Below are positions 243 to 64,000 of a DNA stretch of 64,000 bases, one piece after another. Source of the stretch: Orbicella franksi (taxonomy: Eukaryota); assembly GCA_964199315.1 (NCBI GenBank), contig OZ116705.1, positions 7,874,001 through 7,938,000 on the forward strand, given 5' to 3'. Made by a program: the position numbers and the translations under genes. The notes under the pieces were generated by a model, which was not told the DNA's origin, did not search any database, and worked only from the letters and a program-made list of their open reading frames with translations. The number at the start of each line of letters is the position of its first letter. Position 1 is the first letter of the stretch.

Positions 243-502
243 ATGGAGGACGTGAGCTGTACTTTCCAGCCCACTATTTCTATGCTGAGAAACGTTTAGT
301 GAACCACTGGATAAAGACCATGATTGTCAATGACTTGGACGAGTGTGAATACCGTTGCTACCTGGATGCAAACTGTGTCAGTCTTAATATTAAGAACAAA
401 GATCCCAACGGAACACATGAATGTGAGCTGAATAACTCCACTCACTTGGAGCACGATGGGAATCTGACGGACAACCATCTTTACTATTATCGTGGCGCCG
501 AA
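243..502 (+). CDS. Gene copy 1, exon 2: PAN/apple-like domain of a secreted PAN-EGF-cbEGF-D8C (uromodulin/OIT3-like) protein
   Basis: Acceptor ttttttcAG at 241-242, donor GTaagt at 503. The 260-nt phase 1-0 exon translates (D)GGRELYFPAHYFYAEKRLVNHWIKTMIVNDLDECEYRCYLDANCVSLNIK...HECELNNSTH...YYYRGAE. The C-x3-C-x5-C...CELN pattern is typical of cnidarian PAN-like modules. Near-identical exons lie at 32060 and 62592. Confidence 0.85.
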
Positions 503-798
503 GTAAGTGACTATCATTTTTTTTTTTTTTTTTTTTTTAAACTTTTCGCCTTCAGTTGTTTGATAAGCCAATTTACACCAAAGTTAATGGACATATAAGC
601 TCTCCACGAAAATCTTAATGTTTGTGCATAAATTACTTTTCTTACGTCCGGGTTGCGTCGGCTAAAATCGGCTGACAAGAATTTCAATCCCAAGAGTGAA
701 ATAAACGTGTGTCTTGAGCAGTCATTCATTCATTTATTCTAACAACAAGAGAGTAGTAGATTATTTATAAGCAACTATTTTCCTTTTCTGCGTTTCAG

Positions 799-919
799 AA
801 CAAGTGCGGAAAGATCGGACGGAAGTGCGAGAACAACTCAACTTGTCAGTCCGGTTTTACACAGAAAGGATATCGATGTTCGTGTACTACTGGGTTCGAG
901 GGCGAACACTGTGAGAATG
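799..919 (+). CDS. Gene copy 1, exon 3: EGF-like domain
   Basis: Acceptor tttcAG at 797-798, donor GT at 920. Phase 0-1, in frame with exon 2. NKCGKIGRKCENNSTCQSGFTQKGYRCSCTTGFEGEHCEN has 6 Cys with EGF spacing. Confidence 0.9.
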
Positions 920-1307
920 GTAACTATGCTACTCCTAACATACCCTTGTGTTGTAACTATCATTTAGCGCAAATTTCGTTGAACATCAAACATTCTGTGG
1001 TAGAAGTTAAAAGTTTGAACATGCCGTTCTTTATATGTTAACATTAAAACTCGCATATTTTCAGAAAATTAGTTCACCATAATTTTTGACTCTGTTAAAC
1101 GAATTTTCCGGTGTTTTCCCCAGACAAAGTCTCCATCACTTACAGACAGCATTTCGTTAAAAATTAACAGATAAATTGTCTCGTAAAACCAAGTTTAACT
1201 GATATTCCAAATTTTATACTTTTTAGAGGTAATCTGACGAATTAAAGGCACTTAGTTGCTTTTCCGATTCAGTGGATCCTATGAAACATGTTTTACCTTA
1301 ACTTTAG

Positions 1308-1430
1308 ATATTGATGAATGCGATAGAGGTTCTCACAAATGCCACGTGAACGCCAGCTGCAACAACACCAAGGGAGGGTACAACTGCTCTTGTAAAGACG
1401 GATACACTGGAGATGGACAAAATTGCGCAG
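1308..1430 (+). CDS. Gene copy 1, exon 4: calcium-binding EGF domain
   Basis: Acceptor tttAG at 1306-1307, donor GT at 1431. 123 nt, phase 1-1. DIDECDRGSHKCHVNASCNNTKGGYNCSCKDGYTGDGQNCA carries the cbEGF DIDEC and CxNxxGxYxC signatures. Confidence 0.92.
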
Positions 1431-1784
1431 GTTTCTTTCATGTCTGTGTATAGCATACTTTAAGCCAATGATACAAGGTTTAACATTTGATGAGCAACAA
1501 ATATTGCAGCTGCTGTTCAACAAATGCTGAACAGTGCATAATGTGATGTTGAACGTTGAAATATGCCGTTCAATATGTTGAAAGTTGTTGAACGAAAATA
1601 GAACTTGACTCTATTCCGTTCAACAGTCTGATTGAAAATCCGTTGGAACGAGGTCGCATGACCGATACAGAATATGCTTGTTTAACACGCCTTTGTCACT
1701 TGGATGCGAATTGGACAGGAACTAAGATATGTATTTTACAACGGTGGATAAATATAACATTCATATCACATTCTCTCATGTCAG

Positions 1785-1913
1785 ATATCGACGAATGTGC
1801 TGCACAGGTCAACCCATGCGTTACAGTTGCTAAACCTGAGTGCATGAATACGGATGGTTCGTACAACTGCCTTTGCAAAGGTGGATTTGTAATGGAGGGT
1901 TCTAGCTGCGAAG
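1785..1913 (+). CDS. Gene copy 1, exon 5: calcium-binding EGF domain
   Basis: Acceptor tcAG at 1783-1784, donor GT at 1914. 129 nt, phase 1-1. DIDECAAQVNPCVTVAKPECMNTDGSYNCLCKGGFVMEGSSCE. Confidence 0.92.

Positions 1914-4263: not shown

Positions 4264-4312
<49 letters not shown>
4264..4312. repeat. (GA)n microsatellite
   Basis: Direct reading of the sequence. Confidence 0.95.
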
Positions 4313-6037: not shown

Positions 6038-6399
6038 CTGACATATGTAACAACTACCAAAATCTGACTGATGCGGAAAGAAAATATAACTACACAACAC
6101 AAAATGAGAAATGTGACAACTTACCCGATAACTGGTATCGTTTCCAAGGAGCTGCAGGCACAAAAATGGTGACCACATGTCCACCGATGAAGAGATGTGA
6201 TGCACACTTCCCTATCTGGTTGAAAGAGAATCACCCTACAGTTGCTGAGGGTACAGTCCAAAGAAAATTCTGCATTCACATGGAGAGTAACTGTTGCAAG
6301 GTTTTGGTCTTCATTAAAGTAAAGAACTGCGGCTCCTACTATATCTACAACTTATTTTACCCAGGGGAGTGTAACGCTCGTTACTGTAGCACTGACTAA
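6038..6399 (+). CDS. Gene copy 1, terminal exon: UMOD/GP2/OIT3-type D8C (D10C) cysteine-rich domain
   Basis: Poly-T acceptor AG at 6036-6037, phase 1, stop TAA at 6397-6399. DICNNYQNLTDAERK...CDNLPDNWYRFQGAAGTKMVTTCPPMKRCDAHFPIWLKENHPTVAEGTVQRKFC...CC...IKVKNCGSYYIY...CNARYCSTD contains the WYRF, C..RC...P.WL...HP and V.NC..YY.Y motifs and 10 Cys. Confidence 0.92.
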
Positions 6400-11722: not shown

Positions 11723-12461
11723 TTCTTTTCTTTTCTTTCTCTTTTTTTTTTTTATTTTGTCGTTAGATGTAACTAGACACTCTAAGAGCGTTTACTCGGT
11801 GACGACTTTTTTTTCACCGTATAACAAATTAAAACGACAGCACCGTATCAATAGGATGGGCCGTAATCTTTTTTCTCAGGGTTAGAAAATTTAAGATTTG
11901 GAAAGAAATGTAAGCTTATCTTCATCACTCGTATTTTGTGTTGTGTGGCGGCCATAATAAGATTTAAATACGCGGTCAACTGGTGCGAGGTCTGGAACCA
12001 AGAATTCAGGAAAATAAGGGAAATTCTGATACCTCACCGAGCCACTCCCTGTCAATCACTGATGTAGTTATAATTTTACATTAACAAGATTATACAATGT
12101 AATTTTGAAATTCGACTCCATTGCGAAGATTCTCTCCTTGCTGTCTACGTTGACACCGGTTTTCAAATTGCGAGAAAGGTTCGCAGGTTTTTTTTCTTTT
12201 GTTCGCTTTTGTTTCTTTGTTTGTTCTTGGGGAGGGGGTGGGGGGGATAGTTCTTTTTGCCCTTTGAATCGTGTGCTCGTTTTGTAACCAGTGTAGCTAT
12301 CTTTTTAAAATCCATAAATTATCAGACTGAAAACCGTAATGAAAAAAATCAAGAACTGCAACGGTGGACAAAAGCCCTTGGGAGACTGATGTAATTCAAC
12401 GTGCTTGTCTGTGTTTATCTTTTATCTTTTTCACTGAAGTTTGAAAAAGCACTGATATTCT

Positions 12462-12546
12462 TTTAAAGAATTGCTATCTTTAAAGAATTGCTATCTTTAA
12501 AGAATTGCTATCTTTAAAGAATTGCTATCTTTAAAGAATTGCTATT
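12462..12546. repeat. 17-bp tandem repeat, 5 copies
   Basis: TTTAAAGAATTGCTATC x5, near perfect. Confidence 0.95.
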
Positions 12547-12954
12547 CTCTCCTGCCTACTAAATACAATGTTAAAACTCAGGCGAAATTACGCATTGTAG
12601 GTAGGGTGGGGGGAAAGGCTAAGCAGGTGAAGTTGTTCTTGCTCGCGACTGTCGTCTGGCGTGTGTGCAAAAGTGCCAAGAGCGCAAGTTTGTCTCAAGA
12701 CTTTTGTCCATGATTGCAGGTGAAAACTAAATTAACTGAATCCTCTTAGTTCTGTGGGGGTGTCTGATGAAGGGTTTATAGTGGTAGCACTTTTACAGCG
12801 ATGTGGTCCATCTTAGTGCCAGGCAACTGGTGAATGGCTGACTGGCTGTGCTGGTTCACACATACATTGAACGCCCCAACTCGCACCCTTGACATGGTGA
12901 CGGCCACACTCCGGGCAACGGTATCAACCTGCCGGGTAAACTAGATAACTAATA

Positions 12955-13030
12955 GCTGTCCGCTTCACCACGTGGGATATAGGGCCGCAACATCTTCTCT
13001 CCACCTCAATCTGTCCCTAACCCTGTGCTT
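12955..13030 (-). mobile_element. 3' fragment of an RTE-type LINE
   Basis: The minus strand reads VRDRLRWREDVAALYPTW, resembling the RDR..WR..VAAL C-terminus of RTE ORF2. A paralogous copy lies at ~52130-52200. Confidence 0.5.
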
Positions 13031-14506
13031 TGTTTCTGTCACAACCCTTTCGGGAATTCTTCTTCAATAGAAATATATACTATTTTAAGAATGACGAAGC
13101 CAAACTGTGAATATAAACCCTGGTCGCATAATGATCACAATTTCTTTTAGACTGACAACATGTGGTTTAGCTAAACTACCTCCAGTTGACAATCTTTATC
13201 TTCCGCTTTCTTCGCCTCTTGGAGACTTAAAGATATTTTCGGAAACAAGGGGGCAAGGTCATCATGTTACATGGAAAAACGGATAATTTTGGATTATTTT
13301 AAGGGAACAAGTGCTGTCTGGGAATTATCAACAGACACCTGATGTCAAGGAGCAAAATTGCAAAAGTTTTATGACATTATGAAAAAGTGTAAGCTCTGAC
13401 TAGAAGATATTGCGTCGTAAACCTTATTGATTTTTAGCACCTTTTACTCCCAATATTCTATAACTCCTCTTGGTATTCAACATCGAGAATTTATCATTTA
13501 AAATGAAATATATTCAGGTACAACACGCGGGATGAAAAAGGGAAATCGTTAACGATACCAACTTGATAAGCCATCCAGTTCACAAAAATAACATTCAAAC
13601 TATTCTCACTGCATAATTAATTAGCCCATTGCAAAACATGGTGTTATTCCATAACATTCCCCCGTTTTCGCCCGTGCTGGTGGCGTCGGTAATGCTCCGC
13701 ACCATTTGGAGTTTATATTTGGTCTCACCGCTTGAAGCGTGGTCTTTTTGTCCTGTACTCCACAAAGACAGTCGTCTTTTGCGACCCGACCACCTCCCCT
13801 GGTGGCGGTTGACCAAGCTCCTATCTGCTCATATCTTCGTTGCATGCCTACTGCCTCATCAGTCGCGGACTCTTCCCATAACTTAATCTTATGCGATGAG
13901 GTAATGAGTATGCAGTGAGGATATGGTACTAATGAGAGTATACCAATCAAGAAGCTTGATGCGATGAGAAGAAATAGCGAGAATCTGAAGCTGAGTCATC
14001 TTGCGCGTAGTTATTTGCGATAAGTAAAACCGGAATTTTGGAAGTTTATTTTCTTCTGTGATCCAAGGTTTAACTGCAGAAAATCCCTTTTAATATCGCT
14101 TGAAGACAGTGAATTAGCTTACCTATGTCTTTTATTTCGAATAAAGAAAAAGTTCACATTTACACAAGAATGGCTATCCTTTAGACATATCCAGCAAACC
14201 TTGGTAAACGAATTAATTAAATAACAGTATCCTCTTTCCTCATTACAAATGTGCAATTAGAACAGAATTAAAGCATATACGAGCTGTGGTCTGCTGAGTC
14301 GTCCGTCATGCGAGAAAGTGACATGATTGGCTCATGTCTGACATCAAAACGTTGTTTTAACTGTGAGTCATATCATGCCATCTTTCATTAGTCGTTGTTA
14401 GCTTTTGTTTCAGCATAATTCGACTAGACATCACAGATGATTATTCGATATTATATTGACTTCTATCTGAGAGTGATTAGATAAAGACATCCGTCGCAAT
14501 TTAAGA

Positions 14507-14576
14507 ATGAGTGTTTCTCTGCTTTTCGTTTTCGTGCCATGGATTTCAGTAATCCTCTGTCCAACTCGGGCGCATG
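14507..14576 (+). CDS. Signal-peptide first exon A (upstream alternative or orphan) of copy 2
   Basis: ATG at 14507; MSVSLLFVFVPWISVILCPTRAH + G, then donor GTGAGT at 14577. The hydrophobic leader ends in phase 1, compatible with exon 2 (G+AT = Asp). Confidence 0.7.
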
Positions 14577-17164
14577 GTGAGTTTGAAAATGTACTATTTA
14601 CCTGCTTTGTAATTTATATAGATAGTATCTTAATTAAGTTTTCTTCAGTTTAGCTAAAGATGGCTGTTGAAGAATTCTTGATAATTTGGAAAACGAATCG
14701 ATAGGCAGAAATTATACCTAATTTGTTCGAATTCACATCAAACCCTTTCTATTAGGTCTTACGCGCAGTCAGCCCCATATCTCTCCGCCGTACTGTATTA
14801 ATCTTGTCAAGCGCGGACATGTGACGAGAATAAAGAAAATCAAGCCTAGCACAGACTGTTAATGTCACGATATTCTGACCAATTTTGTAATTTAAATGAT
14901 ATCTTAGCAGGCCATCTGCTTCTCTTCGAGATCAAGGGTTATAGTTTTAAGTCTTTTGTTTGAATCAGGAGCCAAGACGGTCGCTGATGATCTCCGATTA
15001 GCCGTAGATTTGGAAGTGATGTGATAAAATGCTACGCGCATTTGTGCTCATAGCCAATTCATTCTAAAAAAATGATGCATTGTCAAAATCTAGAACGAAG
15101 AAGTGAAGCGGCTCTTAAGTCAGCAGCTTTACCTGTAAAATATGAAACGAAACCGACAGCTGTAGAAAAAAAAAAAAAAAGCTGTGTTTACCATCCCTTA
15201 CCAAAACAGCTGTATTTTTAAACTGTTTTGAACGTATTTTGACGATTTAAACAGTATTTTGAAGTCACGATAGGGTATTTTTGTGCTATTTTGTACAAAA
15301 TTCAAAATTTTGCTTCTTGTTTGTAATGTATTTCAAGTATAGTTAAAACCTACTTCATGATATTGGAATGATTTTCACTCTGTTTTTAACGTAGTTTGAG
15401 CTCAAAACAGGGTTTAAATAGGGGATTTAAAATCTATTTTAATACTATGGCCACAAAAATTTCGTTCAAACAGTTTAAAAATTCTAGTTAAACCCTGTTT
15501 TGAAAGTTATGTTGGCAATGGCCGTAGGTTTAAAAAGTATTTTACAAATTTTCAGTGTTAAAATAGTCTTTAAATAGGATATTTAAAATGTAGTTGACAT
15601 GCCAAGAACATAAAATATGTTTTAAATAGGAAGTTTAAAACTTATTTGAGATAGCAATTCATATTATAAGCTTTAAAATACAACCAAAACATTCTGTTTT
15701 AAACATATTTTAAGTTTTAATCAGGCGAGTATACTATTTAAATAGTAGTTTTAAATAATGACAATAATGTCTATCTTAAAAACAGATTTTAAATACACTA
15801 TTTTTGCACTATTTATAAATCTAGCCCAATGGAAATTTATAATTCAATCAACATAATTTGCATCCCCTTTTTGAAAACTGCTTTAGTGTGTAAGCTTTTA
15901 AGACTCTCTCAATATCAAAATCAATCAAAAATTTAGCCAAGCCAAAAACATGAATCTGTGGACAAACAAACCTTTTCGCAAAATAGCACTCTCTTGCCGC
16001 CCTGCATGTACATGTATTCCTGTCTTTCTTTTTTTTCGAAGTATCAAGCACTGTTTACAACCAAAATGGCAGGCAAAGACTGAACAACTCCAGGACTTCC
16101 CAGAGGAGTTTTTCTATAGGGGTTAAAGTAAATCCCAGTCTTCTCTAAAAGGACATGGTCACAGATGCCATGTTTGTTCACAAGTGAGCTTCAGGTTGAG
16201 AGCGTGTGCTAGGCCGCATGTACATGAACAATATATAAGTTCTATCAAAAGTGTCAGCACTTTAAAAATTTACCAGGAGCAATCAAATCTCTGAAAGCAG
16301 CAACTAATAACTCAAGGAAAATTGATCCAAGTAATTGGTTGACATTACTTATTACTGATTGGGGCTACTCCTAATGGCAAAACATGCCATCACTCACAAA
16401 GTAGACCAGAATTAAGATCTCACAATCAAATCACAAAAAAATCACATCTACTCAATATTAAAAAGAAAATTTCAAGGTACATGTAACTAGCTTGCAGTAA
16501 TTAGCAAATTATTGATTGTGGTCAGTCATCATGTACGTGCTTCAAGGTTACATAATTACATACATGTAATTTTGGCAGAAAGTGTCCCACTCACAGTGTG
16601 CACGTGAAAGATCTCAAAACAAATCACAAGAAATGACAACCAGTGAATGTGAAAAAGAAAATTGCTTGTAGTAATCAGCCAGTTATTTATTGTGGTCCCT
16701 CATCATGGTATACATGCTTCAAGATCTTGCAAAAGTGCTGTCACTCACAAAGTGCACCAAAATCAAGATCTCACAACCAAATTCCTTTTTTTTTTTTGTT
16801 CTTTCAAACAATTCTTTTTTCCTGTTTCCCATATGAGCAGTTACAGTTTTCCAGATTTGACAGTCATTTAATTTTGAAGTCAAAAGTGGTTTGAACTAAT
16901 ATTTGTGTACAACAGTTTATTCATTATTGTTAGCAATGTAGGAAATCCATTTTTTTTTTTGTCTAAACAGTTGTTAATGATAAAAGTTGTTGTTCCAGTC
17001 TGTTATGAGCAGACTTATGTTGAATTTAGTGGTTGGTTTCAATGACAGATGCTGTGACCAGGCTAATATTATGAGAGTCTGTGCTCTGATCTGTTAACAA
17101 GAGGCATTCACTACTAACATCACAGCAAGCTGGCAAAAAGCGCCGGTTCCACAATAACTGTGAA

Positions 17165-22474: not shown

Positions 22475-25400
22475 CAGACATAGCATACCAGTACAAGTAA
22501 ATAACCTGTATTTAGTCTTAAAATGAGTGATATAGAAGATGTTTTATACTAAGTAATGGACCCTTAGCCTCAAGTTCTCAATTGGTATTGATACATGCAT
22601 GTTCCTTTGACTCCTTTACATTGTTTGCAATTCTTCTTAACAAAGAAAATATGTACCACTGATGATGGCCGTACACTCAAAAATGTTTTGGTTTTTAAAA
22701 CTGTAGTAACTTTTAGCCTTTTATACATGTACAGTAGACAAAAAAAATATTATCGCAGGCTCAACTGTTATTACAGCTTTTCATATACAGATACAGTAAG
22801 TGTAGAGCTACATACATTGATTATACAAGTAAAGAAAGAAGTAGAGCCAAGCACCCCCATTAAGCTTGAGTTTGCCCTACACTTACTTCTAGCATGTCAT
22901 GTGTTGTTCACAGCTAGAGCAAAGTTACATGTAAGTTTAAGATTTTTTTGGCACTATTGTTATGCTGTTTTGACACTATTTTTGAACTATTTTAATACTA
23001 TTTTTATACTATTTTTACAGTATTTTCATACTGTTTTTAGACTATTTTGTGCTATTTTAATGCTGTTTTATACTATATTACTGTATGCCATTTCTAGACT
23101 ATTTTAAAGCTATTTTCATATATTTATATCGTATTTGACATATTTTTTTCATATATGATCCACTTTAATTTTTAAACTGTTTAAAGTACTATTGAAATAT
23201 GTTTTGAGACAGTGGATTTCAATAGTGTTTTAAACAGGTTTTAACACCTTTAAAATCAGTCGAAAAATATGTTAAAAATATAATTTTGCACCTATTTTAA
23301 ACCTATTTTGTACAAAATACTTTTAAAATTGTCATTTAAACTAGTTTAAAAATAGTCTTGCAGATTAAAAGCTGTTTTTAAAACGATTTGTGTCCTGTTT
23401 TTATTCCGAATGCTGTGTTCCTCGAGAGATTTTTAAAGTAGTTACAGACTATTTTAATTTTATTTTTAAACTTAGCAAAGGATTTCGAGTTTTGGAATTT
23501 TAACTATATTTTTAAAAGCTTTTCAAAATACATTTCAAACTTTGTTTCAATAGTGTTTTAAACAGGTTTAAACACCATTAAAGGCAGTCGAAAACTACGT
23601 TAAAAATACACTTTTCGCCCTGTTTTTAATCTATTTCATAAAATAGGTTTAAAACAGTTTTTAAAAATAGTATTTACATACATTTAAAATAGTGTTAGGT
23701 TTGGTAAGGGCATGATAAAAGGTTGATGCTGAGTATTTTCCTCTTCATTGGAAAAAGTGTGTCTAACAGTTAACTTGAGGTGCTTACCGTAAATCCTTGA
23801 ACAATCACTCGATCCTTTTAAGTCTTGTAAACAATGTCGAAATTGTATTAATTCAGTTATCAAATTATCAAACTACTTTAATATTCTTATCTTGTGACGT
23901 GAACATAATTTTACTTTGTATCATATGTATATAATCGATGCTTTGAATTAAAATAGTCGGTTTCTTAGCAAAAGAAGCATAATGTTCCCTACCTTTTCTT
24001 AGCCTGTAATTCAAATTGCATGCTAGAGGAAGTTAATTTGCTACCGTTTGTTTAAAACCACCCGCAATGCAGGCTAATTTGCGCAAGCAACAGAAATCTG
24101 TTCTATTATTTATTTGTTCGGTTATTCAGCTCGTACTTGTAGGAAGTTTTACTTCCATAATCCGATAGAAACACAAAACTCGAAAAAAATCTCGCGAAAG
24201 TATCCGAAAAAAGTGTGTAAAAAGAAACTAAATAGGAACATCAAATTTTATTATATTCTTATTAACAGTGTAATGAAGAAAATGGCTCTGATCATGATGT
24301 TTACCTACCGCTAATTTGAAATAACTCTCTCAGCGGAGGTTGACGCAAGAGGTCTTGACGCAAGGGTAAAAATCTTATAGAATTAAATGCTAATCCTGCC
24401 AAAGATGAAGACCCACTCTCGTTTAAATTTGCCATACATACAACTGTACCTAAAAAAATACGTTCATGATGCAGATTTAACAAAGTTTTCGTTTCCGTAT
24501 AATTAACAATTTCCTTGGCAATCTATTTTCTGTCTTCTTGCACGAAACTTCTTCTTAAAAAATAATCAGCCCTAACAGTCGACCAAACAGAAGCTAATAA
24601 TTCGAAGGAACGGTTCCTCCTTTTTCTATGAACTAAAAACGCGAGTTCTAAACCTATTATTTTTTGAACAAAACTTGAAAAGCTAATAGGCACCTCTTTC
24701 CTTATCAGAATATTAATATGCTGTCTGCATAGACAGGTGGCAAGAACAAGGTGGATATTATATCGATGTAACACCAAATCCTCACAAGGACAATTACTTA
24801 TAAATGTATGATGATTAGTAGTGAGAATTTACGCTTCATCTCGGGGACGGATAGATTAAAAAAAAACATGTCGCCCCTCGCACTTTTAAAAGTCGATTTC
24901 AATTTACGTTCTTCCCTAATTACCACTTAATTACGACTTCGAGGTGCCCAGTGTCCCAAGATTAGTGTCCAATGTGGTATAAAGAAGGAATGCACCAGAA
25001 GTTCGAGTAACAAATAGTAAAAAAAGAAAACGTACCCAGATTATTTACATGGTATTGCAAACTTCTGTGCGACTGTTTTAAATATCTTCCCAAAATTAAC
25101 TTTTAACAAGCAGGTCATAATTCAAGACCAGTAAGCTATTTTCTCTGACATTTTCGTTCCAAAAAAGAAAAAAAAAAAAAAAACCGTCAAATGATCTTGA
25201 AGTTTTCGTACGCGGGGTTTCTTCAGTACGTCCACCTTGTTTGCCACCGTAATATCATCTCTCCTGAATGAATGAATGCCGAATGAACGAACGAACGAAT
25301 ATATTGAGACGAGCACGAGCTGCCAATAAATTAAATGAATTTTACCATTAATTTGAACGTCTCCTAACAACAGATGAGCTAAGCCACAAGTTTGCTTGCG

Positions 25401-28028
25401 AGCAACCAAATGTTCATGCATGCTTAAATTACTTGCTAAAATTTGCAAGCTGCGTTGCCTTTAAAGTGCCTATGAAATAAAAAAAAATGTTGCCTACTTG
25501 AAAGGCTTCTGAAAGTAAAGAACAATGTCGTTTTCCTGGCCTTTCCTGTTTAAAAAATAACATCATATAGAAAAACGTGAACCTCATTAACATTATATAA
25601 CTAAACGGAGCTTGAGGCCTGCACTGAACTTTTCTGCAAGATGTGGCATGCTCGTCAAAACAAAAGCTTTATTATCGCTAAAAGCTTTTTTCCTTCCCGC
25701 ATTCGACGCAAGTAGAAAAGCATAAAACTGGCACTAGGGTGTTGAAAACCCATCGACGTAAACCCAGCTTTGAGGAGCGTGGTGAAGCTAAAACTTCATA
25801 ACTCTCTTTCAAATTTGCCCACATGCATTTTTTTTAAATATAGTTTTACTCAACCATATGCTGTTCTCCTCAGTAGTTTACTGACATACATTTTTACATA
25901 TAGCAGTTGGGAGAAACTGCTTGAATATCAGGAAGATGTATGTCACTTTTACCGTAATCATCTTCTTTAGTTAAAACATCTTAACGAGAATGCTCATGAT
26001 TTAATAAGTACTTCAATCATGTAGAGAAATTTGTGCTGATCGTTATTGAAACTTGAAGGGATAACGCTCTATAAAGAGATACATGCAAGTCGTAGTTCTT
26101 CTTGTAGAAAACAAAGCTGATCGACAGTCTGAGGATAAAGGATGGGCCGAGCAATCAGTTTTCCACACGTCTAATCTAACTTTATAAATTCGTCATCTTT
26201 CAAGAGAGAACAAAGGTTCTCTACTGGAACAGCTTCTTTATTTTCCTTACAAATGTTAAACATAAGTTGTTGATTTAACGCTTTTCATAATTTCGGGATT
26301 AGCAAGCTACATTGTACATGTCATGGACTCACTGGACATCTTCTTCCTTGCATTAAGCGCTTGAAAATTCACGAAAGAGAAACCTTCTCTACAGGAAGTG
26401 CTGCTTTATTTTCCTTGTATTTGTAAACATTAAGTTCTAAGTAGCCTTTATTTCGATAATTTCGGGATTAGTTTAACTCGCCACTCTAACCAATTTGTGA
26501 TAGGGTGGTAAATGTATTTGGTGATATTTCAATTATATTGCAGATTTAAGTTCAACAAACGTTTATTTAGTAGACAAGGTTCGCACTTTTCATAAAGCGA
26601 AAATAAAATGTCTCTTAGCTTTGGTAGAATAGTCAGCTTAATTAACGTACATGATGGTGGGCAAACTAAACACATCTGTTGCGTATTTACCTCAATTCGC
26701 CTTAATTTAGGTCACGTTAACTTCAAATACCTCAATTAACATGAGTATTAATTTCCTTTAGAAAATGGACCTTCTAAGAACTGCACTTTAGTAAGTTTGG
26801 TTGCGTGTTTTATTATGTATTTCTCACAGCCTTTGAGCGAATCGTCTTTAAATAGAAACGTAAACTCCTCGAAACACGACGGCGTCAAACTGTGCAAACA
26901 AACAACTGGTCGAATGATGAACACTTTTCCATTAACACACGTAAATCTAAAGTGCTTGTACTTTAAAATCTCTATCTTTCTCGTTCTTTGCTTGTTGGAG
27001 ACTCCAAAGGTTTTTGGGAAGAAGGAATTATAGCCTTTTGCATGAGACAAGAGATAATTTTCAATTACTTTAATGGAACAAGTGATGTCTTGGAACTATC
27101 AACAGAAACTTGATATCAAGGGGCAAAATTGCATAAATTCAAAGTTTTAAGGCATTGGTAGGAAGTGTAAACTCCGATTAGGAAATCTGTCGTCGTTTAC
27201 TTTATTGATTCTTGAGTAGCTTTCTCTCCCAATAGTCTTTCACATGTCTGGGTATTCAACATGTACACTTTCTCATTGTAGAATGTACAAATTTACGGGC
27301 AAACACGCGGGATGAAAAAGGGATATCATTAAGGAAGGTTACCGTCTCAATAAACTATATATGATGTTCAAAAAAAAAAAATAATAACATTCAAACAAAT
27401 GAAAGTATAACAATAAAATATCTAGATGCAAGACTAAATAGCGGAAATATGAAACTGAATCATCGCTGCGTTCAGTTTAAGAAAGAATATTATTTCTTAG
27501 AAGGAAAACCGAAATTTGAGAAATTTATTTTCTTCATTGATCTGAGGTTTAACTGCAGATAATTTATTCAATCAACGCTTGAGGACAGTGAATTAGCGTA
27601 ACGACCTTAACCATGCCTTTTATTTTGATAAAAAGCAAAACAAAACAAAACAAAACAAAACAACTAAAACTCAAGCTTTCACTAGAGTGGTTCTCCTTCA
27701 AATGTATTCAGTAACCAACCTACATGTAGGTAAATAAATTAACTAAAGAACCGTATTCTATTTACTCATTAAAAATGCACAATCAGAGCAGAAAGTTTAT
27801 ACGTACTTTGTGGAGTGCAGTCTCTTGTCAAGTTAATAAGTAACATGATTGGTTTACGTCTGTTATCTGAGCACTGTTTTAAATTTAAGCCATATCATGC
27901 CATCTTTCAGTAGTCGTTGGTAGCTTTTGCTGGAGCTTAATTCGACAAGACACCACTGGTGACTATTCAATACTTTATTGACTTGTATCTGAGACTTATT
28001 AAGTGGAGACATCCGCCGCAAGTTAAGA

Positions 28029-28098
28029 ATGAGTTTCTCTCTGCTTTTCGTTCTCGTGTCATGGATTTCAGTAATCCCTTGTCCAACTCGGGCGCAGG
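28029..28098 (+). CDS. Signal-peptide first exon B (proximal) of copy 2
   Basis: ATG at 28029; MSFSLLFVLVSWISVIPCPTRAQ + G, donor GTGAGT at 28099, phase 1. Confidence 0.78.
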
Positions 28099-42935: not shown

Positions 42936-43040
42936 ATGTTGATGAATGCAAATGAGGTTCTCACAAATGCCACAACACCAATGGAGGGTATAACTGCTCT
43001 TGTAAAGGCGGATACTCTGGAGATGGACATAATTGCACAG
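42936..43040 (+). pseudogene. Relic paralog: disabled cbEGF exon (homolog of 1308-1430)
   Basis: DVDECK*GSHKCH[18-nt deletion]NTNGGYNCSCKGGYSGDGHNCT. TGA at 42953; AG/GT borders intact. Confidence 0.88.
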
Positions 43041-43464
43041 GTATGTTTATTGTCTGTATATAACAGTATATCTTAGGATATTTTATGTCGAGAAATGGTT
43101 GAGATTCATTGACTTCACGTCAGCCTATGCAAACCTAATCAGCACGGAAGCCAGCAGGACAAACAGACAAGCAAACAAAAGAGAAATAGTATTTTGACAG
43201 CATGTTATTCCTGTGTGGATTAATGGCGGTAACATTGCGTCAAGTGGTGTCAACGATTCTCCTGTACACATTTATAATCCCTTGTGGAGAAAAGAAGTGA
43301 GAGTAAGGTGTCTTGACTCGCCAATAGCATAGGTCGACGATGTAAAGCTGTAGAGGCCACAGAAGGCATAAAATGTTAGCAGCATGTCAAGTCCTAATGC
43401 TATCACGGTTCCTCTGATTTGAATCATTCGACCACCAATATTTGCATTCGATCGCACCTTTCAG

Positions 43465-43598
43465 ATATCGACGAGTGTGCTACCGGAAGCCATACCTGTG
43501 AAAACAAACCGAATTCTGGGTGCAGTAATACCGAGGGTCATTCAACTGCTCCTGTGATTTTGGATACGTAAGCAACGACAATAGGCAAACTTGTACAG
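43465..43598 (+). pseudogene. Relic paralog: frameshifted cbEGF exon
   Basis: DIDECATGSHTCENKPNSGCSNTEG[-1]SFNCSCDFGYVSNDNRQTCT. 134 nt instead of 135; AG/GT borders intact. Confidence 0.85.
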
Positions 43599-43886
43599 GT
43601 AAACACTCCACATCTTATTACATTTTAATTACCTTTCAATCCATTGGCTCTTGTCTAGTAAGGACTTCTTTCATTCGATTAGCCATTTTTTCGCGTAGGT
43701 GATTGTCCATTTACCCACGCTCGAGAAGGCGGTAAAAACCTGAAGCGCAATTTGAATACTGATTATTTTTGCCAAGGGCTTTGCAGTCGTCGACCCTAGC
43801 TATATTTGACATGTAAATACATTTTCTCGAGCATTTTAGCGAGCCGAATAAATTGAGGAAATCTCCATACTTAGTAAACACAGCAT

Positions 43887-44051
43887 TAGACCACGAATAG
43901 TCCCTCTTCCGCTTAGTCCGTCGAGCGAGACCGTAAATAAACCGCCAGAAAAAAAAATGGCCGCGTGAACTCGCGCGGCGATTTTCTTCTCGCGGTTTTC
44001 TATCGCGTCACCCACGACGGACAAAGCGAAAGAGGGGCTACTGGTAGTCTA
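43887..44051. mobile_element. 165-bp MITE with TAGAC...GTCTA termini
   Basis: TAGACCACGAATAGTCCCTCTT matches the reverse complement of the right end, TAGACTACCAGTAGCCCCTCTT. Confidence 0.7.
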
Positions 44052-44894
44052 ACAAAATATGCAAGCGTCAAATATAACAAATCCTGTTACGTTCGCAACT
44101 AGCAAAACTCGCCTGACAGTATTTACAAATACAGTTTTATTATTTTTAGACATGAGTTTTGTATCGGTGAAAACCGAGAGAAAACTATTTGTTTACAATA
44201 TGCACCTTAAACAACTGAACTTACAACAAAGCATGCAACTCAAGTGTCATTATTTAGGAATAAGCGGAATCAAAACAAAAAATAAATTTATTAAGTGTCT
44301 CACAGCATGGTTTCATGATCAAATCAGGAAGAATTTACAAATCCTATTGAACATATCTCGTCGAAGCAACGTCACAGTTTTTATAGAAAACGCGACGAAG
44401 GTTTCTACAACAAAGAGTCGCTTACCGCAATTTGGCAATTCGCTTCAGTGTGAATCTTCCGGGAAGAAACGCCAAGCAAAATTTGCGAAGAGTGAAATGA
44501 ACTAATGTTTTTGATTGATCAATGAATCAACCACATTTTACCGTTTTTACCGTTTCTTAAAGTCTCTAAACACACCAGACACGTTTGATTTTTCTAGTTG
44601 ATCCATGTGATTTTCTCCCGCAATGTCTGTACGCGGATGGTCGCTCGCTTGCTCTTACGGGGACGTTATAACCAAATTTTCTTGCCCTGATAGTTTAGTA
44701 AAACTCTCTACCCATGGTGCTCCTCTGATGCACTTCGCGAGCTGAAGCTCCGCTATGAACCAATTCTTTTATACCATCAAAATTAAATAGGAAACAAACT
44801 GTACGTGCGATGATGAAATGAAGTTCACAGTTTATGCATAGAGTAATTTAACTCACTCTCTTTTCTCAATTTTGGTGTTTGTTTTTCCCTTTAG

Positions 44895-45266
44895 TTGATC
44901 CATGCCATTAATACGAAACTCTAAACAGTTCTGATAAAAATATTAACAACGAAGAATCTCCGGATAATCCATTGTGTGACAGTTATCAATCGCTGTCCAG
45001 CAATGGCAGCTGGTATCGTTTTCAAGGAGTTGCAGGAACAAGATTACCAACCCAAAGTGTCCAGCAACCTTTAGATGTCACATTCGATATCCTGGATGTT
45101 GAATGTTAAATACAAACCCTTGTCACCAGAAGGCGTAACAGAAAACGGCATGACTAATTGTTGCGCCGAATATATATTCATTCACATAAAAAATTGTAGT
45201 TCCTACTTCGTCTACATGTTGTTGCCTACTCCTACATGTAATCTCCGATACTGTGGGACCGACTAA
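44895..45266 (+). pseudogene. Relic paralog: disabled D8C terminal exon
   Basis: VDPCH*YETLNSSDK...LCD...SWYRFQGVAGTRLPT, followed by frameshifts, ending ...CCAEYIFIHIKNCSSYFVYMLLPTPTCNLRYCGTD*. Stop at 44909. Confidence 0.88.
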
Positions 45267-45754: not shown

Positions 45755-46685
45755 GCGGTAGCGGTAGAAGCAGCAGTACAAACAGCAGAAGTAATAGCAG
45801 CAGCAGTAGTTCGCGTAGTGGCAGTAGCCGCAACAGCAGCAAGTAGCAATATCAGTGGTAGCAGCAGTGGTAGAAGTAGTAGCAGGAGCGNNNNNNNNNN
45901 NNNNNNNNNNNNNNNNNNNNNNNNNNNNNNNNNNNNNNNNNNNNNNNNNNNNNNNNNNNNNNNNNNNNNNNNNNNNNNNNNNNNNNNNNNNNNNNNNNNN
46001 NNNNNNNNNNNNNNNNNNNNNNNNNNNNNNNNNNNNNNNNNNNNNNNNNNNNNNNNNNNNNNNNNNNNNNNNNNNNNNNNNNNNNNNNNNNNNNNNNNNN
46101 NNNNNNNNNNNNNNNNNNNNNNNNNNNNNNNNNNNNNNNNNNNNNNNNNNNNNNNNNNNNNNNNNNNNNNNNNNNNNNNNNNNNNNNNNNNNNNNNNNNN
46201 NNNNNNNNNNNNNNNNNNNNNNNNNNNNNNNNNNNNNNNNNNNNNNNNNNNNNNNNNNNNNNNNNNNNNNNNNNNNNNNNNNNNNNNNNNNNNNNNNNNN
46301 NNNNNNNNNNNNNNNNNNNNNNNNNNNNNNNNNNNNNNNNNNNNNNNNNNNNNNNNNNNNNNNNNNNNNNNNNNNNNNNNNNNNNNNNNNNNNNNNNNNN
46401 NNNNNNNNNNNNNNNNNNNNNNNNNNNNNNNNNNNNNNNNNNNNNNNNNNNNNNNNNNNNNNNNNNNNNNNNNNNNNNNNNNNNNNNNNNNNNNNNNNNN
46501 NNNNNNNNNNNNNNNNNNNNNNNNNNNNNNNNNNNNNNNNNNNNNNNNNNNNNNNGCAGATGCAGTGGCAGCAGCAGTAGAAGCAGTGGCAGTAGCAGTA
46601 GCAGTAGCAGAAGCAGAAGCTGTAGCAGTAGAGCAGCAGTTGTAGTTGCAGAAAGAGTAGTAGCCGTAGCAGTGGCAGTATAGCA
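45755..46685. repeat. AGC/AGT trinucleotide-type microsatellite spanning an assembly gap
   Basis: agtagcagc-type repeats flank both sides of the N-run. Confidence 0.9.
45891..46555. other. Assembly gap (665 N)
   Basis: Run of N. Confidence 1.
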
Positions 46686-58637: not shown

Positions 58638-58707
58638 ATGAATTTCTCTCTGCTTTTCGTTCTCGTGTCATGGATTTCAGTAATCCCTTGTCCAACTCGG
58701 GCGCAGG
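58638..58707 (+). CDS. Signal-peptide first exon B of copy 3
   Basis: MNFSLLFVLVSWISVIPCPTRAQ + G, donor GTGAGT at 58708. Confidence 0.78.
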
Positions 58708-60010: not shown

Positions 60011-60792
60011 AATTTAAGGAGTGTTAACGCGCGCAATTCAAGGAGTGTTAAAGCGCGCAATTTAATGACTGTTATAGTCTGGGATTTAAGGGGCCTTAAA
60101 ATGCGCGATTTAAGGATTGTTAAAGTGCACAATTTTAAGAGTCTTAAAGTGCGTAATTTAAGGAGTGTTTAGTTGCACAAATTAAGGAGCCTTAAATTGC
60201 GAAATTTCTAGAGCCTCAATGTGCGTAATTTAAGGAGCCTTAAAGTGCACAATTTAAGGAGTCTTAAAGTGCGCTATTAAAGGAGTCTTAAAGTGCGCAA
60301 TTTAAGAAGTCTTAAAGTGCGCTATTTAAACAGTCTTAAAGTGCGCAATTCAAGGGGTCTTTAAGTGCGCTATTTAAGTTGTGTTAAAGTGTGCAATTTT
60401 AGGAGTCTTAAAGTGTGTAATTTAAGAAGTGTTTAACTGCGGAAATTAAGGAGTCTTAAATTGCGCAATTTCAGGAGTCTTAATGTGCGTAACATAAGAA
60501 GCCTTAAACTGCACAATTTAAGGAGCCTTAAATCGTGCTATTTAAGGAGTCTTAGAGTGCGCTGTTTAAGTAGTCTTAAAGTGCGTAATTTAAGAAGTCT
60601 TAAAGTGCGCTATTTATAAACAGTCTTAAAGTGCGCAATTCAAGGAGTCTTAAAGTGTACTATTTGAGGAGTCTTAAAGAGCGCAAGTTAAGGAGTGTTA
60701 AAGAACGCAATTGAAGGAGTCTGAAAGTACATACGTTAAGGAGTCTTAAAGTGCGCAACTGAAAGAGTCTTAAAGTGTTTAATTTAAGGAGT
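60011..60792. repeat. 24-bp minisatellite (paralog of 29400-30230)
   Basis: Same consensus and variant order, about two units shorter. Confidence 0.95.
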
Positions 60793-62591
60793 GATAAGCG
60801 CCCAATGAAACTTGAAACTAGATATATTACGTAAAGCATTTTTTGGTGATTTTACGAAAGCTTTAATAAAGAAGTCTTGGCCCAGATACTGATAATGTTC
60901 CAAATTGTTTCTGTGGTTCAGGACCAATTTACAGAAACACTCGTGAAAGTATCAGAAAAATACATAAAAAAAGCTGGATAGGAATACAGAATTTCATCCT
61001 ATTTTTCACCCACAGTGTAACGACTAAAATTGTCGTGATTCTCATCAATACCCACCGCTAATTTAAAATAACAATACTGTTAGTAGAGGTTGTTTAAGCG
61101 CAAATTCTAAAGAAAAGTTTGCCGGGGTCTAGACCCAATAGTAAAAGTGTTATCGAATTAAATGCGAATTATTTTGTAAAAATTTGCCAAAGATTAAAAT
61201 CGATGATGATGTAAATCCGACATAGACGTCGTGTCTCGTACTAATTAGCCATTTCCAAATTTAAGGCAATCTAATTTCTCTCTTGCAACACGTAAATTTT
61301 CTCGAAGACTTGATCTGACCTATCAGTCAACAAAAGCTAATATTTGAAGGGGACGGTTCCTTCTTCTGCCGTTGAGCGAAATTTCGGGTTCCACAACTAC
61401 TAATTTTTTTAAAACTAAACTTGAAAAGCTTGATCAGCACTCTCTATTGTCAGAATATTAACAGGCTGTCTGAATAGACAGTTGGCAAAAAAACAAAAAA
61501 CAAAAAAAAACATGGGTATTATGTTGAAATACCTCCAAATTCTCACAAAGAGAGTAACTGAGAAATGTGTGATGCTTAGATAGGAGAATTTACGCTTGAT
61601 ATCGGCAATGAGATTACAAAACAAGCCGTCACTTGCACTACGTTGTTCTCTAATTATTACTAAATTACGACTTCGAGGTGTCCAGTCTTCTAAATATTTG
61701 TAGTTTGCTATTTCATTTAAACACCAAGTAAGTGATTTAAGCATCAGGGTGGAATTTTTAAGAAAGAATTCACCTGAGGTACGAATAGCATGTAAACAAA
61801 CACTTTGTACTGAGATTGTCTACATCGTGTTGCAAGCTTCTGTTTGACTGTTTTAAAATTCTTCTGAAAATATAATTATTTCTAACACATTACATATGGA
61901 AAAAACAGTTGAAAGTACTGGTGAAATGAAACTAATGATATAATTTTACCTGCGTTTGCATTATTTCTTTGAACTGTGAAATTTATTTTATCTAGCTCCC
62001 ATAAATAAGATGTTATCAGTGTTATTCAAGGTACCTAGTTGATATATCTTTAGCTTTAAGAAAATGTAAAAGGGACTGAAAAGTACCTAAAATTAATCTG
62101 GTCCACTTAAAACTGAAATTTCTCGATTTACTATCGTAATTCGTCGTAAATTCTTCATAAAAAAGCGATGACACTGAAAGGTGAACTCGGAAATAAATCA
62201 TGCAGTTATCATGGATCCTCACAAGACTTAGCAAGCGGGAAAGAAAATTGCGAGTACACTCTTAGCTCCCCTTTAAAGAAGTTATTTCATATATATTTGG
62301 TATCACAACAATAACGAACCGGTTAGAAATTATAGTTTTACCGATTTGTTTATACAAAGGTCTGGCAAAAAAAATCAATCTCGTGCGTGGAGAGTAAAGC
62401 GAAATAAAGATATACTGCATGTTGATAGGAGATACTATGTACATAAGCCCTCATCGCTCACTCCTAAATTACTCTGTTCTTTAAAATGTTTGAATATTTA
62501 TTTTTGTCTCAGACTTTAATTATAAAAGCCTGTTTCAAATTTTCCTTTATTTATTATAAGCTCTAGATAAACATGTTTACATTTTTTTCAG

Positions 62592-62851
62592 ATGGAGGAC
62601 GTGAGCTGTACTTTCCAGCCCACTATTTCTATGCTGAGAAACGTTTAGTGAACCACTGGATAAAGACCATGATTGTCAATGACTTGGACGAGTGTGAATA
62701 CCGTTGCTACCTGGATGCAAACTGTGTCAGTCTTAATATTAAGAACAAAGATCCCAACGGAACACATGAATGTGAGCTGAATAACTCCACTCACTTGGAG
62801 CACGATGGGAATCTGACGGACAACCAGCTTTACTATTATCGTGGCGCCGAA
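62592..62851 (+). CDS. Gene copy 3, exon 2: PAN/apple-like domain; downstream exons lie beyond the window
   Basis: AG at 62590-62591, GT at 62852. 259/260 identical to copy 1 exon 2 by my reading, with all Cys intact. Confidence 0.85.
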
Positions 62852-64000
62852 GTAAGTAACCATGACATTTTTAACCTTAAGCCCTCGATTGCTTTGTTAG
62901 ATTGTATATTACCACCGGGAGTCCTCACTCACAAACGTTTGAGGCTTGAATAAGTAATGAGAACAAGCAGGCCTTAAGCCAGAGACAAGAAGCGAGCAGG
63001 ACTCGGAAGAGAACACAATTCATCCTTGTAGGGAGGAAGTGGTTGGGGTTGGCAAAAGTCTATAGTTGAAAAGAAAACAATGTAAGAGAGAAGACAATTG
63101 CAGGATAATGCTGACCTATACATATCCAACCAGCGTATACATTTATAACGAATTATCCCACAGCTTATGACACAGTTAACGTTTGGCCAACTGATTTTAA
63201 CCCTTTTTTCACTGATTATTGCAGTCTGTTGATAAACAGAAATTTATTAGGTGACTTCTTTTGTTTCAAACACGAGTAGTATCTTTCTATTCATGCAGGA
63301 AAAACAAACACCGGAAGCTTGAAGTTTGTCGAGCTAACTGCCAATGAAGTTAAGAATATTGCGATCGATATAAGATACTGTACTGCAACAAAATACTCTT
63401 TAATAAGGCTAAAGAGTCGTTTTCGTTATAGGTTTCATGCAAATTTTGGTTAGAATTAGGCGATACGCCCAAAATATCCCAGTATTTTATCACAAATGAA
63501 ATGGCTTAGATCACACTCGGGTTGTGTTTAATAATACCTCCTTTTTCTTCCGCATTTTGTCGGGTAACAGAATTTCAGTTTAAAAAGTAAAGAAGAGCTG
63601 TATCGTGTCATTCGAAGATATCTCATTCGTAAATAACCTTGCGCGTTCTTAATTTCGCGAGGTTTTATTTCGCGACTTCAGGATATGATGTTAAGAAAAG
63701 AACATTAAAAATCGCAAAAGTACGCCGAGAAAGGTCAAATAACACTTGATGAGGCAATTACTTGACCTCGTAAATTGATTACCGTAGTTAATTTCGCGAG
63801 CGTTTTTTGCGAGTCTTAAAATTCGGAAAAAATCACGAAAATTAATACTCGCGAAAAAACTGAGAGCGCGAAAAAATAAGGGAACTTTAACACCAGATTA
63901 CGTAAGAAATAATCCTTGGCTAATTTTAAATGATGTTTAGTCACGGGTTCGTTGGTAGTCGGTTGATTATTTTTTCCTTGAAAATATCCAGTCTTTATGT

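What the first reader, a model, noticed from the sequence alone, without database searches (positions are those of the whole stretch)
480..62960. 5' halves homogenised, 3' halves diverged: recombination breakpoint at the exon2/intron2 border makes chimeric genes
Seen: intron 1 and exon 2 of all copies are ~94-99% identical (copy 1 vs copy 3 exon 2 differ at 1 of 260 nt). Right after the donor, copy 1 intron 2 (296 bp) is unalignable to copy 2 intron 2 (1418 bp), and their EGF and D8C exons differ at roughly a quarter or more of sites. Copy 3 has a copy-1-type exon 2 (WIK, NDL, DEC, GNLTD) but a copy-2-type intron 2 (gtaagtaaccatgacattttt...). Diagnostic bases interleave in the last 30 nt of the exon (CAG as in copy 2, TATTAT as in copy 1). 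Inference: unequal crossover or gene conversion swaps a common promoter-signal-PAN cassette onto divergent EGF-D8C cassettes, giving combinatorial diversification.
Basis: partly seen in the sequence, partly recalled or inferred. Interest (0 to 1): 0.72.

Follow-up and report, generated by a model that had tools for sequence, protein, structure and literature searches.

The report
Mosaic coral PAN-EGF-D8C gene array
A tandem array of secreted coral PAN-EGF-D8C genes has been repeatedly reshuffled by recombination between copies, so genes with near-identical front halves carry anciently diverged back halves; the process is well known, and this is a clear example in an animal group where it is reported to be rare.

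Summary
Copy 1 and copy 3 differ at 1 of 260 nt in exon 2. Intron 2 is 296 bp in copy 1 and 1418 bp in copy 2, and the two cannot be aligned. EGF and D8C exons differ at 22-27% of sites. Identity steps at the donor instead of decaying.

The window (a coral genome, C8:7.874-7.938 Mb) lies in an array of at least 14 signal-PAN-EGF-D8C genes. The DNA downstream of exon 2 falls into three old classes, A, B and C (EGF1 dS 0.72-0.87 between A and B). The 5' region groups the genes differently: six genes, two A and four B, share a 96-99% identical promoter, exon 1 and intron 1. An AU test rejects class monophyly there (p ~1e-47).

Copy 3 is a triple mosaic. Its 5' region is 99% like the next gene downstream. 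A 345-bp tract is copy-1-like (344/345). Its intron 2 is copy-2-like.

The best explanation is recurrent gene conversion and unequal crossover between array members. The "breakpoint" at the donor is the edge of shared homology, not a shown hotspot. Other breakpoints exist elsewhere, and several copies are disabled, copy 2 included. Combinatorial diversification as a function is unproven.

The N gap is intergenic, inside a simple repeat, and does not affect the finding.

The parts
243..502 (+). Copy 1 (class A) exon 2, encoding the PAN/Apple domain. Exon 1 lies 3.7 kb upstream of the window.
   Evidence: Pfam PAN_1, 24.6 bits against a cutoff of 21.4. Splice sites. The spliced ORF is an intact 354 aa.
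503..798 (+). Copy 1 intron 2 (296 bp, class A). High identity to copies 2 and 3 ends at 502-521.
   Evidence: BLAST alignments to copies 2 and 3 stop at 521. No significant local alignment to the class B intron.
799..1913 (+). Copy 1 EGF exon (799-919) and two calcium-binding EGF exons (1308-1430, 1785-1913).
   Evidence: Pfam EGF and EGF_CA. Exon ends.
6038..6399 (+). Copy 1 last exon, D8C domain, stop TAA at 6397-6399. No ZP module follows.
   Evidence: Pfam D8C_UMOD, E 3.4e-16. Translation.
11802..15191 (+). Upstream block with an orphan duplicate of the signal-peptide exon (exon 1', about 14507-14575). Paralogous to 51061-54377 at 93%.
   Evidence: Self-BLAST; tblastn.
23713..33454 (+). 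Copy 2 promoter, exon 1, intron 1, exon 2 and intron 2, duplicated as 54379-64000 at about 96% (copy 3).
   Evidence: Self-BLAST.
28029..28098 (+). Copy 2 exon 1 (signal peptide MSFSLLFVLVSWISVIPCPTRAQ), GTGAGT donor, phase 1.
   Evidence: The N-terminus is homologous to that of an annotated Oculina protein, P0006.
32060..32319 (+). Copy 2 (class B) exon 2, PAN. A PAN cysteine is lost (DEC to DEY).
32320..33737 (+). Copy 2 intron 2 (1418 bp, class B). Found in five B genes plus one 5'-truncated copy; contains a ~400-bp dispersed repeat.
33738..35696 (+). Copy 2 EGF exon (33738-33858), cbEGF exon (34190-34318) and D8C exon (35332-35696). The D8C exon has a premature TAA at 35613-35615 and a Cys-to-Tyr change, so copy 2 is probably a pseudogene.
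42938..45263 (+). Decayed EGF-EGF-D8C pseudogene with stops, a frameshift and deletions, and no PAN exon.
   Evidence: tblastn. A paralogue lies at big 158487-160858.
45891..46555 (.). Assembly gap in intergenic DNA, inside a GCAGTA-type simple repeat.
58638..58707 (+). Copy 3 exon 1 (signal peptide).
62513..62857 (+). Copy-1-like conversion tract in copy 3: the last 79 nt of intron 1, all of exon 2 (62592-62851) and 6 nt of intron 2. The minimal tract is 62530-62836. The switch to copy-2-like sequence falls between 62836 and 62858.
   Evidence: 344/345 identical to copy 1, against 326/345 to copy 2. The best scan window holds 18 of 18 informative sites, reached by 0 of 300 permutations. Fisher p 2e-7.
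62852..64000 (+). Copy 3 intron 2, class B, 97-98% to copy 2. It runs 283 bp past the window end.

Best explanation
The window is part of a tandem array in a reef-coral genome (C8, 7.70-8.25 Mb, at least 14 copies). The genes encode secreted proteins built as signal peptide, PAN domain, one EGF, one or two calcium-binding EGFs, and a D8C domain.

The array evolves by recurrent non-allelic homologous recombination between misaligned copies. Unequal crossovers and partial duplications move whole 5' or 3' blocks, and short gene-conversion tracts patch individual exons. Each gene is therefore a mosaic.

Downstream of exon 2 the genes fall into old classes A, B and C. The block from the promoter through exon 2 has been exchanged among them. 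In the window and its neighbours, one 5' lineage 96-99% identical now sits on two A and four B gene bodies.

The step in identity at the exon 2 donor marks where A/B homology ends. Exchanges started anywhere in the shared 5' block must resolve before it. Copy 3 shows this: a very recent ~345-bp tract from a copy-1-like donor ends within 22 bp of the donor.

Shown here: discordant histories, the step, the tract, and further breakpoints. Inferred: the molecular mechanism, the direction of transfer (copy 1 to copy 3), and the shares of crossover and conversion.
For: 1. Step in identity. Copy 1 (A) is collinear with copies 2 and 3 (B) at 89-97% from more than 20 kb upstream to 19 nt past the donor. 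After that, intron 2 cannot be aligned. Between copies 1 and 2, dS is 0.13 in exon 2, 0.74 in EGF1, 0.59 in the cbEGF exon and 0.37 in D8C.

2. Family-wide discordance. The 1.5 kb downstream of exon 2 splits 14 copies into A (7), B (5) and C (2), with no BLAST alignment between classes beyond a short match of up to 79 nt. The upstream 1.7 kb groups them differently. The tree of intron 1 has starred clades that mix A and B. The AU test rejects A or B as one clade (delta lnL 220-235, p ~1e-47).

3. The shared 5' lineage. Copy 3's promoter, exon 1 and intron 1 are 99% to L002 (A), 98% to L005 (B), 97% to copy 2 and g6 (B), and 96% to copy 1 (A).

4. The copy 3 tract. It is 344/345 identical to copy 1, inside a background where the three copies are 97-98% alike. 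The best scan window holds 18 of 18 informative sites, reached by 0 of 300 permutations. The intron just upstream is closest to L002.

5. Other mosaics. g5 has class A exon 2 to EGF2 joined to class B EGF3 and D8C. g1 has a g4-like 5' (92%), a copy-1-like middle (92%) and a B-like D8C (88%).

6. Not an obvious artefact. A 3387-nt contig of run X1 covers 60199-63585 with no difference. All 4 sampled 31-mers of 62810-62880 are held by 20 runs; all runs holding any part of it come from 11 studies.
Against: Crossover and conversion cannot be told apart for most events without the flanks of every copy, and only 248 kb of the ~570-kb array was read.

Run X1 may come from the same individual as the assembly. 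The 4-word k-mer search is weak and could not be followed up by laying reads.

A GENECONV-style run test on eight copies did not single out the copy 1/copy 3 tract (p 0.11). Only the triplet analysis did.

The origin of the sharp A/B boundary itself remains unexplained. It could be an ancient exon-shuffling join, or a barrier that sharpened over time.
Confidence: 0.85

Rival explanations
1. One ancient chimeric join and nothing since. A single old exon-shuffling or unequal-crossover event in intron 2 put the signal-PAN cassette on two kinds of EGF-D8C body. Later whole-unit tandem duplications alone produced today's pattern.
For: The A/B boundary lies at the same place, within about 10 nt of the donor, in all copies. 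In other coral proteins the same signal-PAN-EGF front is joined to TLDc, C-type lectin, LamG/pentraxin, fibrinogen-C or FN2 domains, so the front module was shuffled in the past.
Against: Whole-unit duplication predicts matching 5' and 3' trees, and that is rejected. It cannot give a 345-bp copy-1-like island inside an L002-like 5' and a copy-2-like 3'. Nor can it give the extra breakpoints in g1 and g5.
Confidence: 0.07
2. Assembly artefact. Copy 3, or the whole copy 3 unit beyond the gap, is a haplotig or a chimera of reads from different copies.
For: An N gap separates the copy 2 and copy 3 units. The two units are 96-98% alike, and arrays of near-identical repeats are hard to assemble.
Against: The DNA right of the gap continues what follows the pseudogene in the paralogous unit. 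It does not repeat what precedes copy 2's upstream block. Copy 3 differs structurally from copy 2: it has no 8.5-kb insert, the cbEGF exon is absent, and its D8C part is only 84% alike. The X1 contig spans the junction exactly, and junction words occur in many runs. The family-wide discordance does not depend on copy 3.
Confidence: 0.04
3. Selection only. The front half is alike because the PAN domain and its regulation are under strong purifying selection, while the back half evolves fast.
For: Exon 2 has pN/pS of about 0.4, and the signal peptide is almost invariant.
Against: Non-coding DNA (promoter, 4 kb of intron 1, more than 20 kb of intergenic DNA) is 89-99% alike between A and B genes. 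Synonymous divergence jumps from 0.13 to 0.74 across one intron.
Confidence: 0.02
4. A selected diversity-generating system. Cassette exchange is favoured because it creates new receptor combinations.
For: There are many 5'/3' combinations. Within class B, dN is at or above dS in some cbEGF and D8C comparisons (for example g4 vs copy 2: dS 0.04, dN 0.118). Relatives carry lectin-like C-terminal domains.
Against: There are no expression data: 0 RNA reads were laid. Several copies are disabled. Block-wise pN/pS in PAN stays below 1. The dN/dS values rest on about 40 codons each.
Confidence: 0.1

Closest known systems
Interlocus gene conversion and unequal crossover in tandem gene families (haemoglobin Lepore, red/green opsin hybrids, RHD/RHCE, CYP21A2/CYP21A1P, glycophorin A/B hybrids). 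This comparison rests on established knowledge, not on a test made here.
   Same: Paralogues in tandem exchange segments. Hybrid genes arise with a front from one copy and a back from another. Short tracts are bounded on both sides, and part of the gene evolves in concert while the rest diverges.
   Different: This is a cnidarian array of uncharacterised secreted genes with at least 14 members. There are three old 3' classes and several 5' lineages, so the result is a multi-block mosaic, not a two-gene hybrid.
Mosaic immune or recognition gene arrays of invertebrates (sea urchin Sp185/333, snail FREPs, Hydractinia Alr allorecognition genes with sequence donation from neighbouring copies). Recalled from memory, so a lead and not a test.
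   Same: Clustered secreted or surface genes whose variants are patchworks made by recombination among neighbours.
   Different: No link to immunity or allorecognition has been shown here. There are no population data, and many copies look dead.
Uromodulin / GP2 / OIT3 (the D8C domain family)
   Same: EGF and calcium-binding EGF domains followed by a D8C domain (Pfam PF23283).
   Different: There is no ZP polymerisation module and no membrane anchor: the ORF stops immediately after the final CSTD residues that follow the D8C domain. A PAN domain sits at the N-terminus instead.
Tandemly duplicated genes of corals (Noel et al. 2023, Genome Biol 24:123, PMC10236652)
   Same: A large tandem array retained in a coral genome. 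EGF-type domains are among the amplified families in that paper.
   Different: That paper states that gene conversion 'is very rare' in coral tandem duplicates. This array shows clear exchange between copies.

Membership tests
Interlocus gene conversion / NAHR mosaic in a tandem family | Adjacent segments of the same genes give significantly different trees | tested here: met
   Classes defined on the downstream DNA are rejected as clades on intron 1 plus exon 2 (AU p 4e-47 and 5e-49). Starred clades mix the classes.
Interlocus gene conversion / NAHR mosaic in a tandem family | The likeness extends to silent and non-coding sites, so it is not selection alone | tested here: met
   dS is 0.13 in exon 2 against 0.74 in EGF1 for copies 1 and 2. 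Intron 1 and the promoter are 96-99% alike among six genes.
Interlocus gene conversion / NAHR mosaic in a tandem family | A tract bounded on both sides by sequence of another history (conversion, not crossover) | tested here: met
   In copy 3, 62513-62857 is copy-1-like (344/345). It is flanked by L002-like intron 1 and copy-2-like intron 2.
Interlocus gene conversion / NAHR mosaic in a tandem family | Paralogues are more alike than orthologues in the exchanged part | not tested
   No orthologous array from another coral species could be fetched with these tools.
Interlocus gene conversion / NAHR mosaic in a tandem family | The mosaic is present in the DNA of the animal and not only in the assembly | tested here: inconclusive
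   An X1 contig of 3387 nt spans the junction with 0 differences, but X1 may be the same individual.
UMOD/GP2/OIT3 family | D8C domain | tested here: met
   PF23283, 59.6 bits against a cutoff of 27.
UMOD/GP2/OIT3 family | C-terminal ZP module with a membrane anchor | tested here: not met
   The stop codon comes immediately after the final CSTD residues that follow the D8C domain, in copies 1 and 2 and in four other genes.
PAN/Apple domain proteins | PAN domain above the Pfam threshold | tested here: met
   PF00024, 24.6 bits against a cutoff of 21.4. This is a marginal pass.

The most novel reading that the evidence does not exclude
The array could be a germline diversity generator for a coral secreted recognition family. 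A constant promoter-signal-PAN front would be recombined onto variable EGF-D8C backs often enough that individuals carry different repertoires of hybrid genes. That would resemble sea urchin Sp185/333 or Hydractinia Alr, with the wider PAN-EGF-X superfamily (lectin, fibrinogen, pentraxin-like and TLDc ends) built the same way.
Probability: 0.1. Interest if true: 0.75.

Novelty: new member of a known kind. Interest (0 to 1): 0.4.

Why it matters
It is a well-resolved case of partial concerted evolution and hybrid-gene formation in a coral. A recent genome paper concluded that gene conversion between tandem duplicates is very rare in this group (PMC10236652). It also marks an uncharacterised, strongly expanded family of secreted PAN-EGF-D8C proteins whose front module occurs on many different C-terminal domains in corals. 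The array warns annotators and population geneticists that paralogue exchange here will mimic allelic variation. The mechanism itself is textbook, and no function has been shown.

Tried and rejected
1. Fetching the whole array. Only C8:7690001-7874000 came through. Copy 3's later exons and eight other copies are therefore known only from 3.5-kb loci or from hit tables.

2. RNA evidence. Two raw poly(A) RNA runs laid no read on 58001-64000 (no test of expression). RNA runs that "hold" the stretch hold mostly intron words, so they say nothing about splicing.

3. A GENECONV-like longest-run test on eight copies flagged other pairs but not copy 1/copy 3 (p 0.11).

4. Positive selection in PAN. Block-wise pN/pS is 0.27-0.72 in the variable blocks and 0 in the invariant last six codons, so there is no support.

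5. A first global three-way alignment timed out and was redone with a faster setting.

6. Literature searches on D8C, PAN and coral, and on uromodulin in Acropora, found nothing on this family.

7. The candidate mini exon 1 just upstream of exon 2 (MFEYLF...) was rejected in favour of the conserved signal-peptide exon 4 kb upstream.

8. The long ORFs at 45671-46645 run through the N gap and are not genes.


Full report
**What the window is.** The window is G000:C8:7874001-7938000 of a 497-Mb eukaryotic genome. Public runs that hold it are labelled coral or coral metagenome. Relatives of its proteins come from Acropora, Montipora and Oculina.

Five exon translations of copy 1 hit Pfam PAN_1, EGF, EGF_CA (twice) and D8C_UMOD. 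With the signal-peptide exon 3.7 kb upstream of the window, copy 1 splices to an intact 354-aa secreted protein. The order is signal, PAN, EGF, cbEGF, cbEGF, D8C, and the ORF stops right after "CSTD".

Copy 2 (exons at 28029-28098, 32060-32319, 33738-33858, 34190-34318 and 35332-35696) has one cbEGF fewer. It also has a TAA at 35613-35615 and two Cys-to-Tyr changes, so it is probably a pseudogene. For copy 3, only exon 1 (58638-58707), exon 2 (62592-62851) and most of intron 2 lie in the window.

**The gap.** N 45891-46555 lies between a decayed EGF-EGF-D8C pseudogene (42938-45263) and copy 3's upstream block. It sits inside GCAGTA-type repeats. Nothing coding crosses it. Its two sides map in order onto the paralogous unit upstream. 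It does not touch any junction in the finding.

**The observation.**
- Copy 1 and copy 3 differ at 1 of 260 nt in exon 2.
- Copy 1 and copy 2 differ at 15 of 260 nt.
- Intron 2 is 296 bp in copy 1 and 1418 bp in copy 2. The two do not align better than shuffled sequence.
- EGF and D8C exons are 73-78% identical between copies 1 and 2.
- Copy 3 starts intron 2 with the copy-2 form.
- Diagnostic bases interleave at 62819, 62827 and 62836.

Identity steps and does not decay. Copy 1 against copy 3 is 344/345 up to 62857 and noise from 62858 on.

**What lies behind it.** The exon 2 cassette occurs at least 14 times on C8 between 7.70 and 8.25 Mb. The 1.5 kb after exon 2 sorts these copies into three classes with no BLAST alignment between them beyond a short match of up to 79 nt: A (7 copies, including copy 1), B (5 copies, including copies 2 and 3) and C (2 copies). 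The 1.7 kb before exon 2 sorts them differently.

A maximum-likelihood tree of intron 1 has fully supported clades that mix A and B, for example L002(A) with copy 3(B) and L004(A) with L007(B). The AU test rejects A or B as a clade on intron 1 plus exon 2, with p of about 1e-47.

Copy 1 is collinear with copies 2 and 3 at 89-97% for more than 20 kb upstream, right up to the donor.

Silent sites tell the same story. Between copies 1 and 2, dS is 0.13 in exon 2 and 0.74 in the next exon. Between A and B generally, EGF1 dS is 0.72-0.87, while within a class it is 0-0.04. So the back halves are old paralogues and the front halves are recent relatives. Selection on the protein cannot explain this.

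**Copy 3 in detail.** Copies 1, 2 and 3 are about equally alike (97-98% by substitutions) through the promoter, exon 1 and intron 1. Copy 3's closest relative there is the next gene downstream, L002 (class A). The match is 99% over 3.25 kb of promoter, exon 1 and intron 1, and 17 differences in the last 1.66 kb of intron 1.

Within 62513-62857, copy 3 instead matches copy 1 at 344/345. The best scan window holds 18 of 18 informative sites, reached by 0 of 300 permutations, and a shared 8-bp indel lies in the tract. From 62858 on it is copy-2-like at 97-98%.

Copy 3 is therefore a triple mosaic. The copy-1-like part is a short, recent conversion tract and not a whole front half.

Hit tables give a view past the window. 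Copy 3's EGF1 part is 98% to copy 2. About 344 bp that include the cbEGF exon are absent. The D8C part is only 84% alike. This suggests yet another breakpoint, but the sequence itself could not be read.

**Other mosaics.**
- g5 (C8:7.786-7.795 Mb) has class A sequence from exon 2 to the first cbEGF, then class B sequence from 300 bp before the next cbEGF to the end.
- g1 has a 5' region 92% like g4 (B), a middle 92% like copy 1 (A) and a D8C 88% like B genes.
- In L013 and L014, homology to the other copies starts only about 42 nt before exon 2.
- A class B body without a front cassette lies at about 8.009-8.012 Mb.
- Orphan signal-peptide exons lie about 5-13 kb upstream of most genes.

The 5' halves are not uniformly homogenised either. 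Several 5' lineages, 77-88% alike, are distributed independently of class.

**Mechanism.** The pattern is what recurrent non-allelic homologous recombination in a tandem array produces. Unequal crossovers and partial duplications shuffle large blocks, and conversions patch short ones.

The junction at the donor is the edge of A/B homology. Any exchange in the shared front block must resolve before it. Its recurrence at the exon/intron border therefore needs explaining only once, when the A/B difference arose. I cannot tell whether that origin was an old exon-shuffling join or a barrier that sharpened with divergence. Related coral proteins carry the same signal-PAN-EGF front on TLDc, C-type lectin, LamG/pentraxin, fibrinogen-C or FN2 ends. 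That fits a history of shuffling of this front module.

**Artefact check.** A 3387-nt contig of run X1 covers 60199-63585 without a difference. X1 carries a SMART cDNA primer at one loose end, so it is probably long-read cDNA, possibly from the same animal.

Of the 41 possible 31-mers in 62810-62880, 27 are unique to copy 3 among the 14 copies read here (from the alignment). All 4 sampled words of that stretch are held by 20 runs; all runs holding any part of it come from 11 studies, under several species labels. The family-wide discordance does not depend on copy 3.

**Function.** No function is shown. No RNA reads were found. Disabled copies are common: copy 2; the class C genes, which have CT in place of GT at the donor; g4, with a D8C Cys-to-Ser change; and g5, with an EGF Cys-to-Tyr change. 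Some within-class cbEGF and D8C comparisons have dN at or above dS, but they rest on few codons. PAN shows pN/pS below 1 throughout.

**Context.** Noel et al. 2023 wrote that gene conversion "is very rare" among coral tandem duplicates, and this array is a counter-example. The kind of event is long known from many tandem families. I rate it a new member of a known kind, of moderate interest.

Noticed in passing
window 14507-14575 and 53695-53763 (also big 89803, 135986 and 167840): Orphan duplicates of the signal-peptide exon (about 82% aa identity, MSVSLLFVFV...) with their promoter-like block (77-78% nt) lie about 5-13 kb upstream of the true exon 1 of most genes. They could be alternative first exons or relics of partial duplication.
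   Followed up: partly
window 29400-30243 and about 60010-60800: Intron 1 of copies 2 and 3, and of copy 1 outside the window, carries a 24-nt tandem repeat array of about 35 units (consensus AATTCAAGGAGTGTTAAAGCGCAC).
   Followed up: no
window 42915-43062 vs 1287-1452: The first EGF exon of the decayed pseudogene is 87-88% identical, intron flanks included, to the extra cbEGF exon that only class A genes have. This hints that class A bodies and these pseudogenes share ancestry.
   Followed up: no
window 15192-23712: An 8.5-kb insert is present upstream of copy 2 and absent upstream of copy 3. It has no ORF of 180 aa or more. Copy 1 has a different insert of about 8 kb at the same place.
   Followed up: partly
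C8:9.66-11.9 Mb (outside the window): At least 40 further EGF-D8C exon sets, 76-87% identical to those of the window, lie in a much larger tandem array on the same chromosome.
   Followed up: no
C8:7938146-7939984 (just past the window): By hit coordinates, copy 3 lacks the ~344 bp holding the cbEGF exon, and its D8C part is only 84% like copy 2's. The frame would be kept, because the exon is phase 1-1. The sequence itself could not be read.
   Followed up: partly
window 59507: Run X1 has a contig end reading CAGTGGTATCAACGCAGAGTACT, a SMART cDNA primer, next to unspliced intron sequence. This points to internal priming or an unspliced or antisense transcript across copy 3.
   Followed up: no
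proteins P0036, P0038, P0041, P0046, P0063, P0118: In Acropora, Montipora and Oculina the same signal-PAN-EGF front is joined to TLDc, C-type lectin, LamG/pentraxin, FN2 or fibrinogen-C domains. All are annotated as uncharacterised or misnamed Notch-like or NELL1-like.
   Followed up: partly
L009 and L010 (C8:8.247 and 8.025 Mb): Both class C genes have CTAAGT in place of GTAAGT at the exon 2 donor.
   Followed up: no
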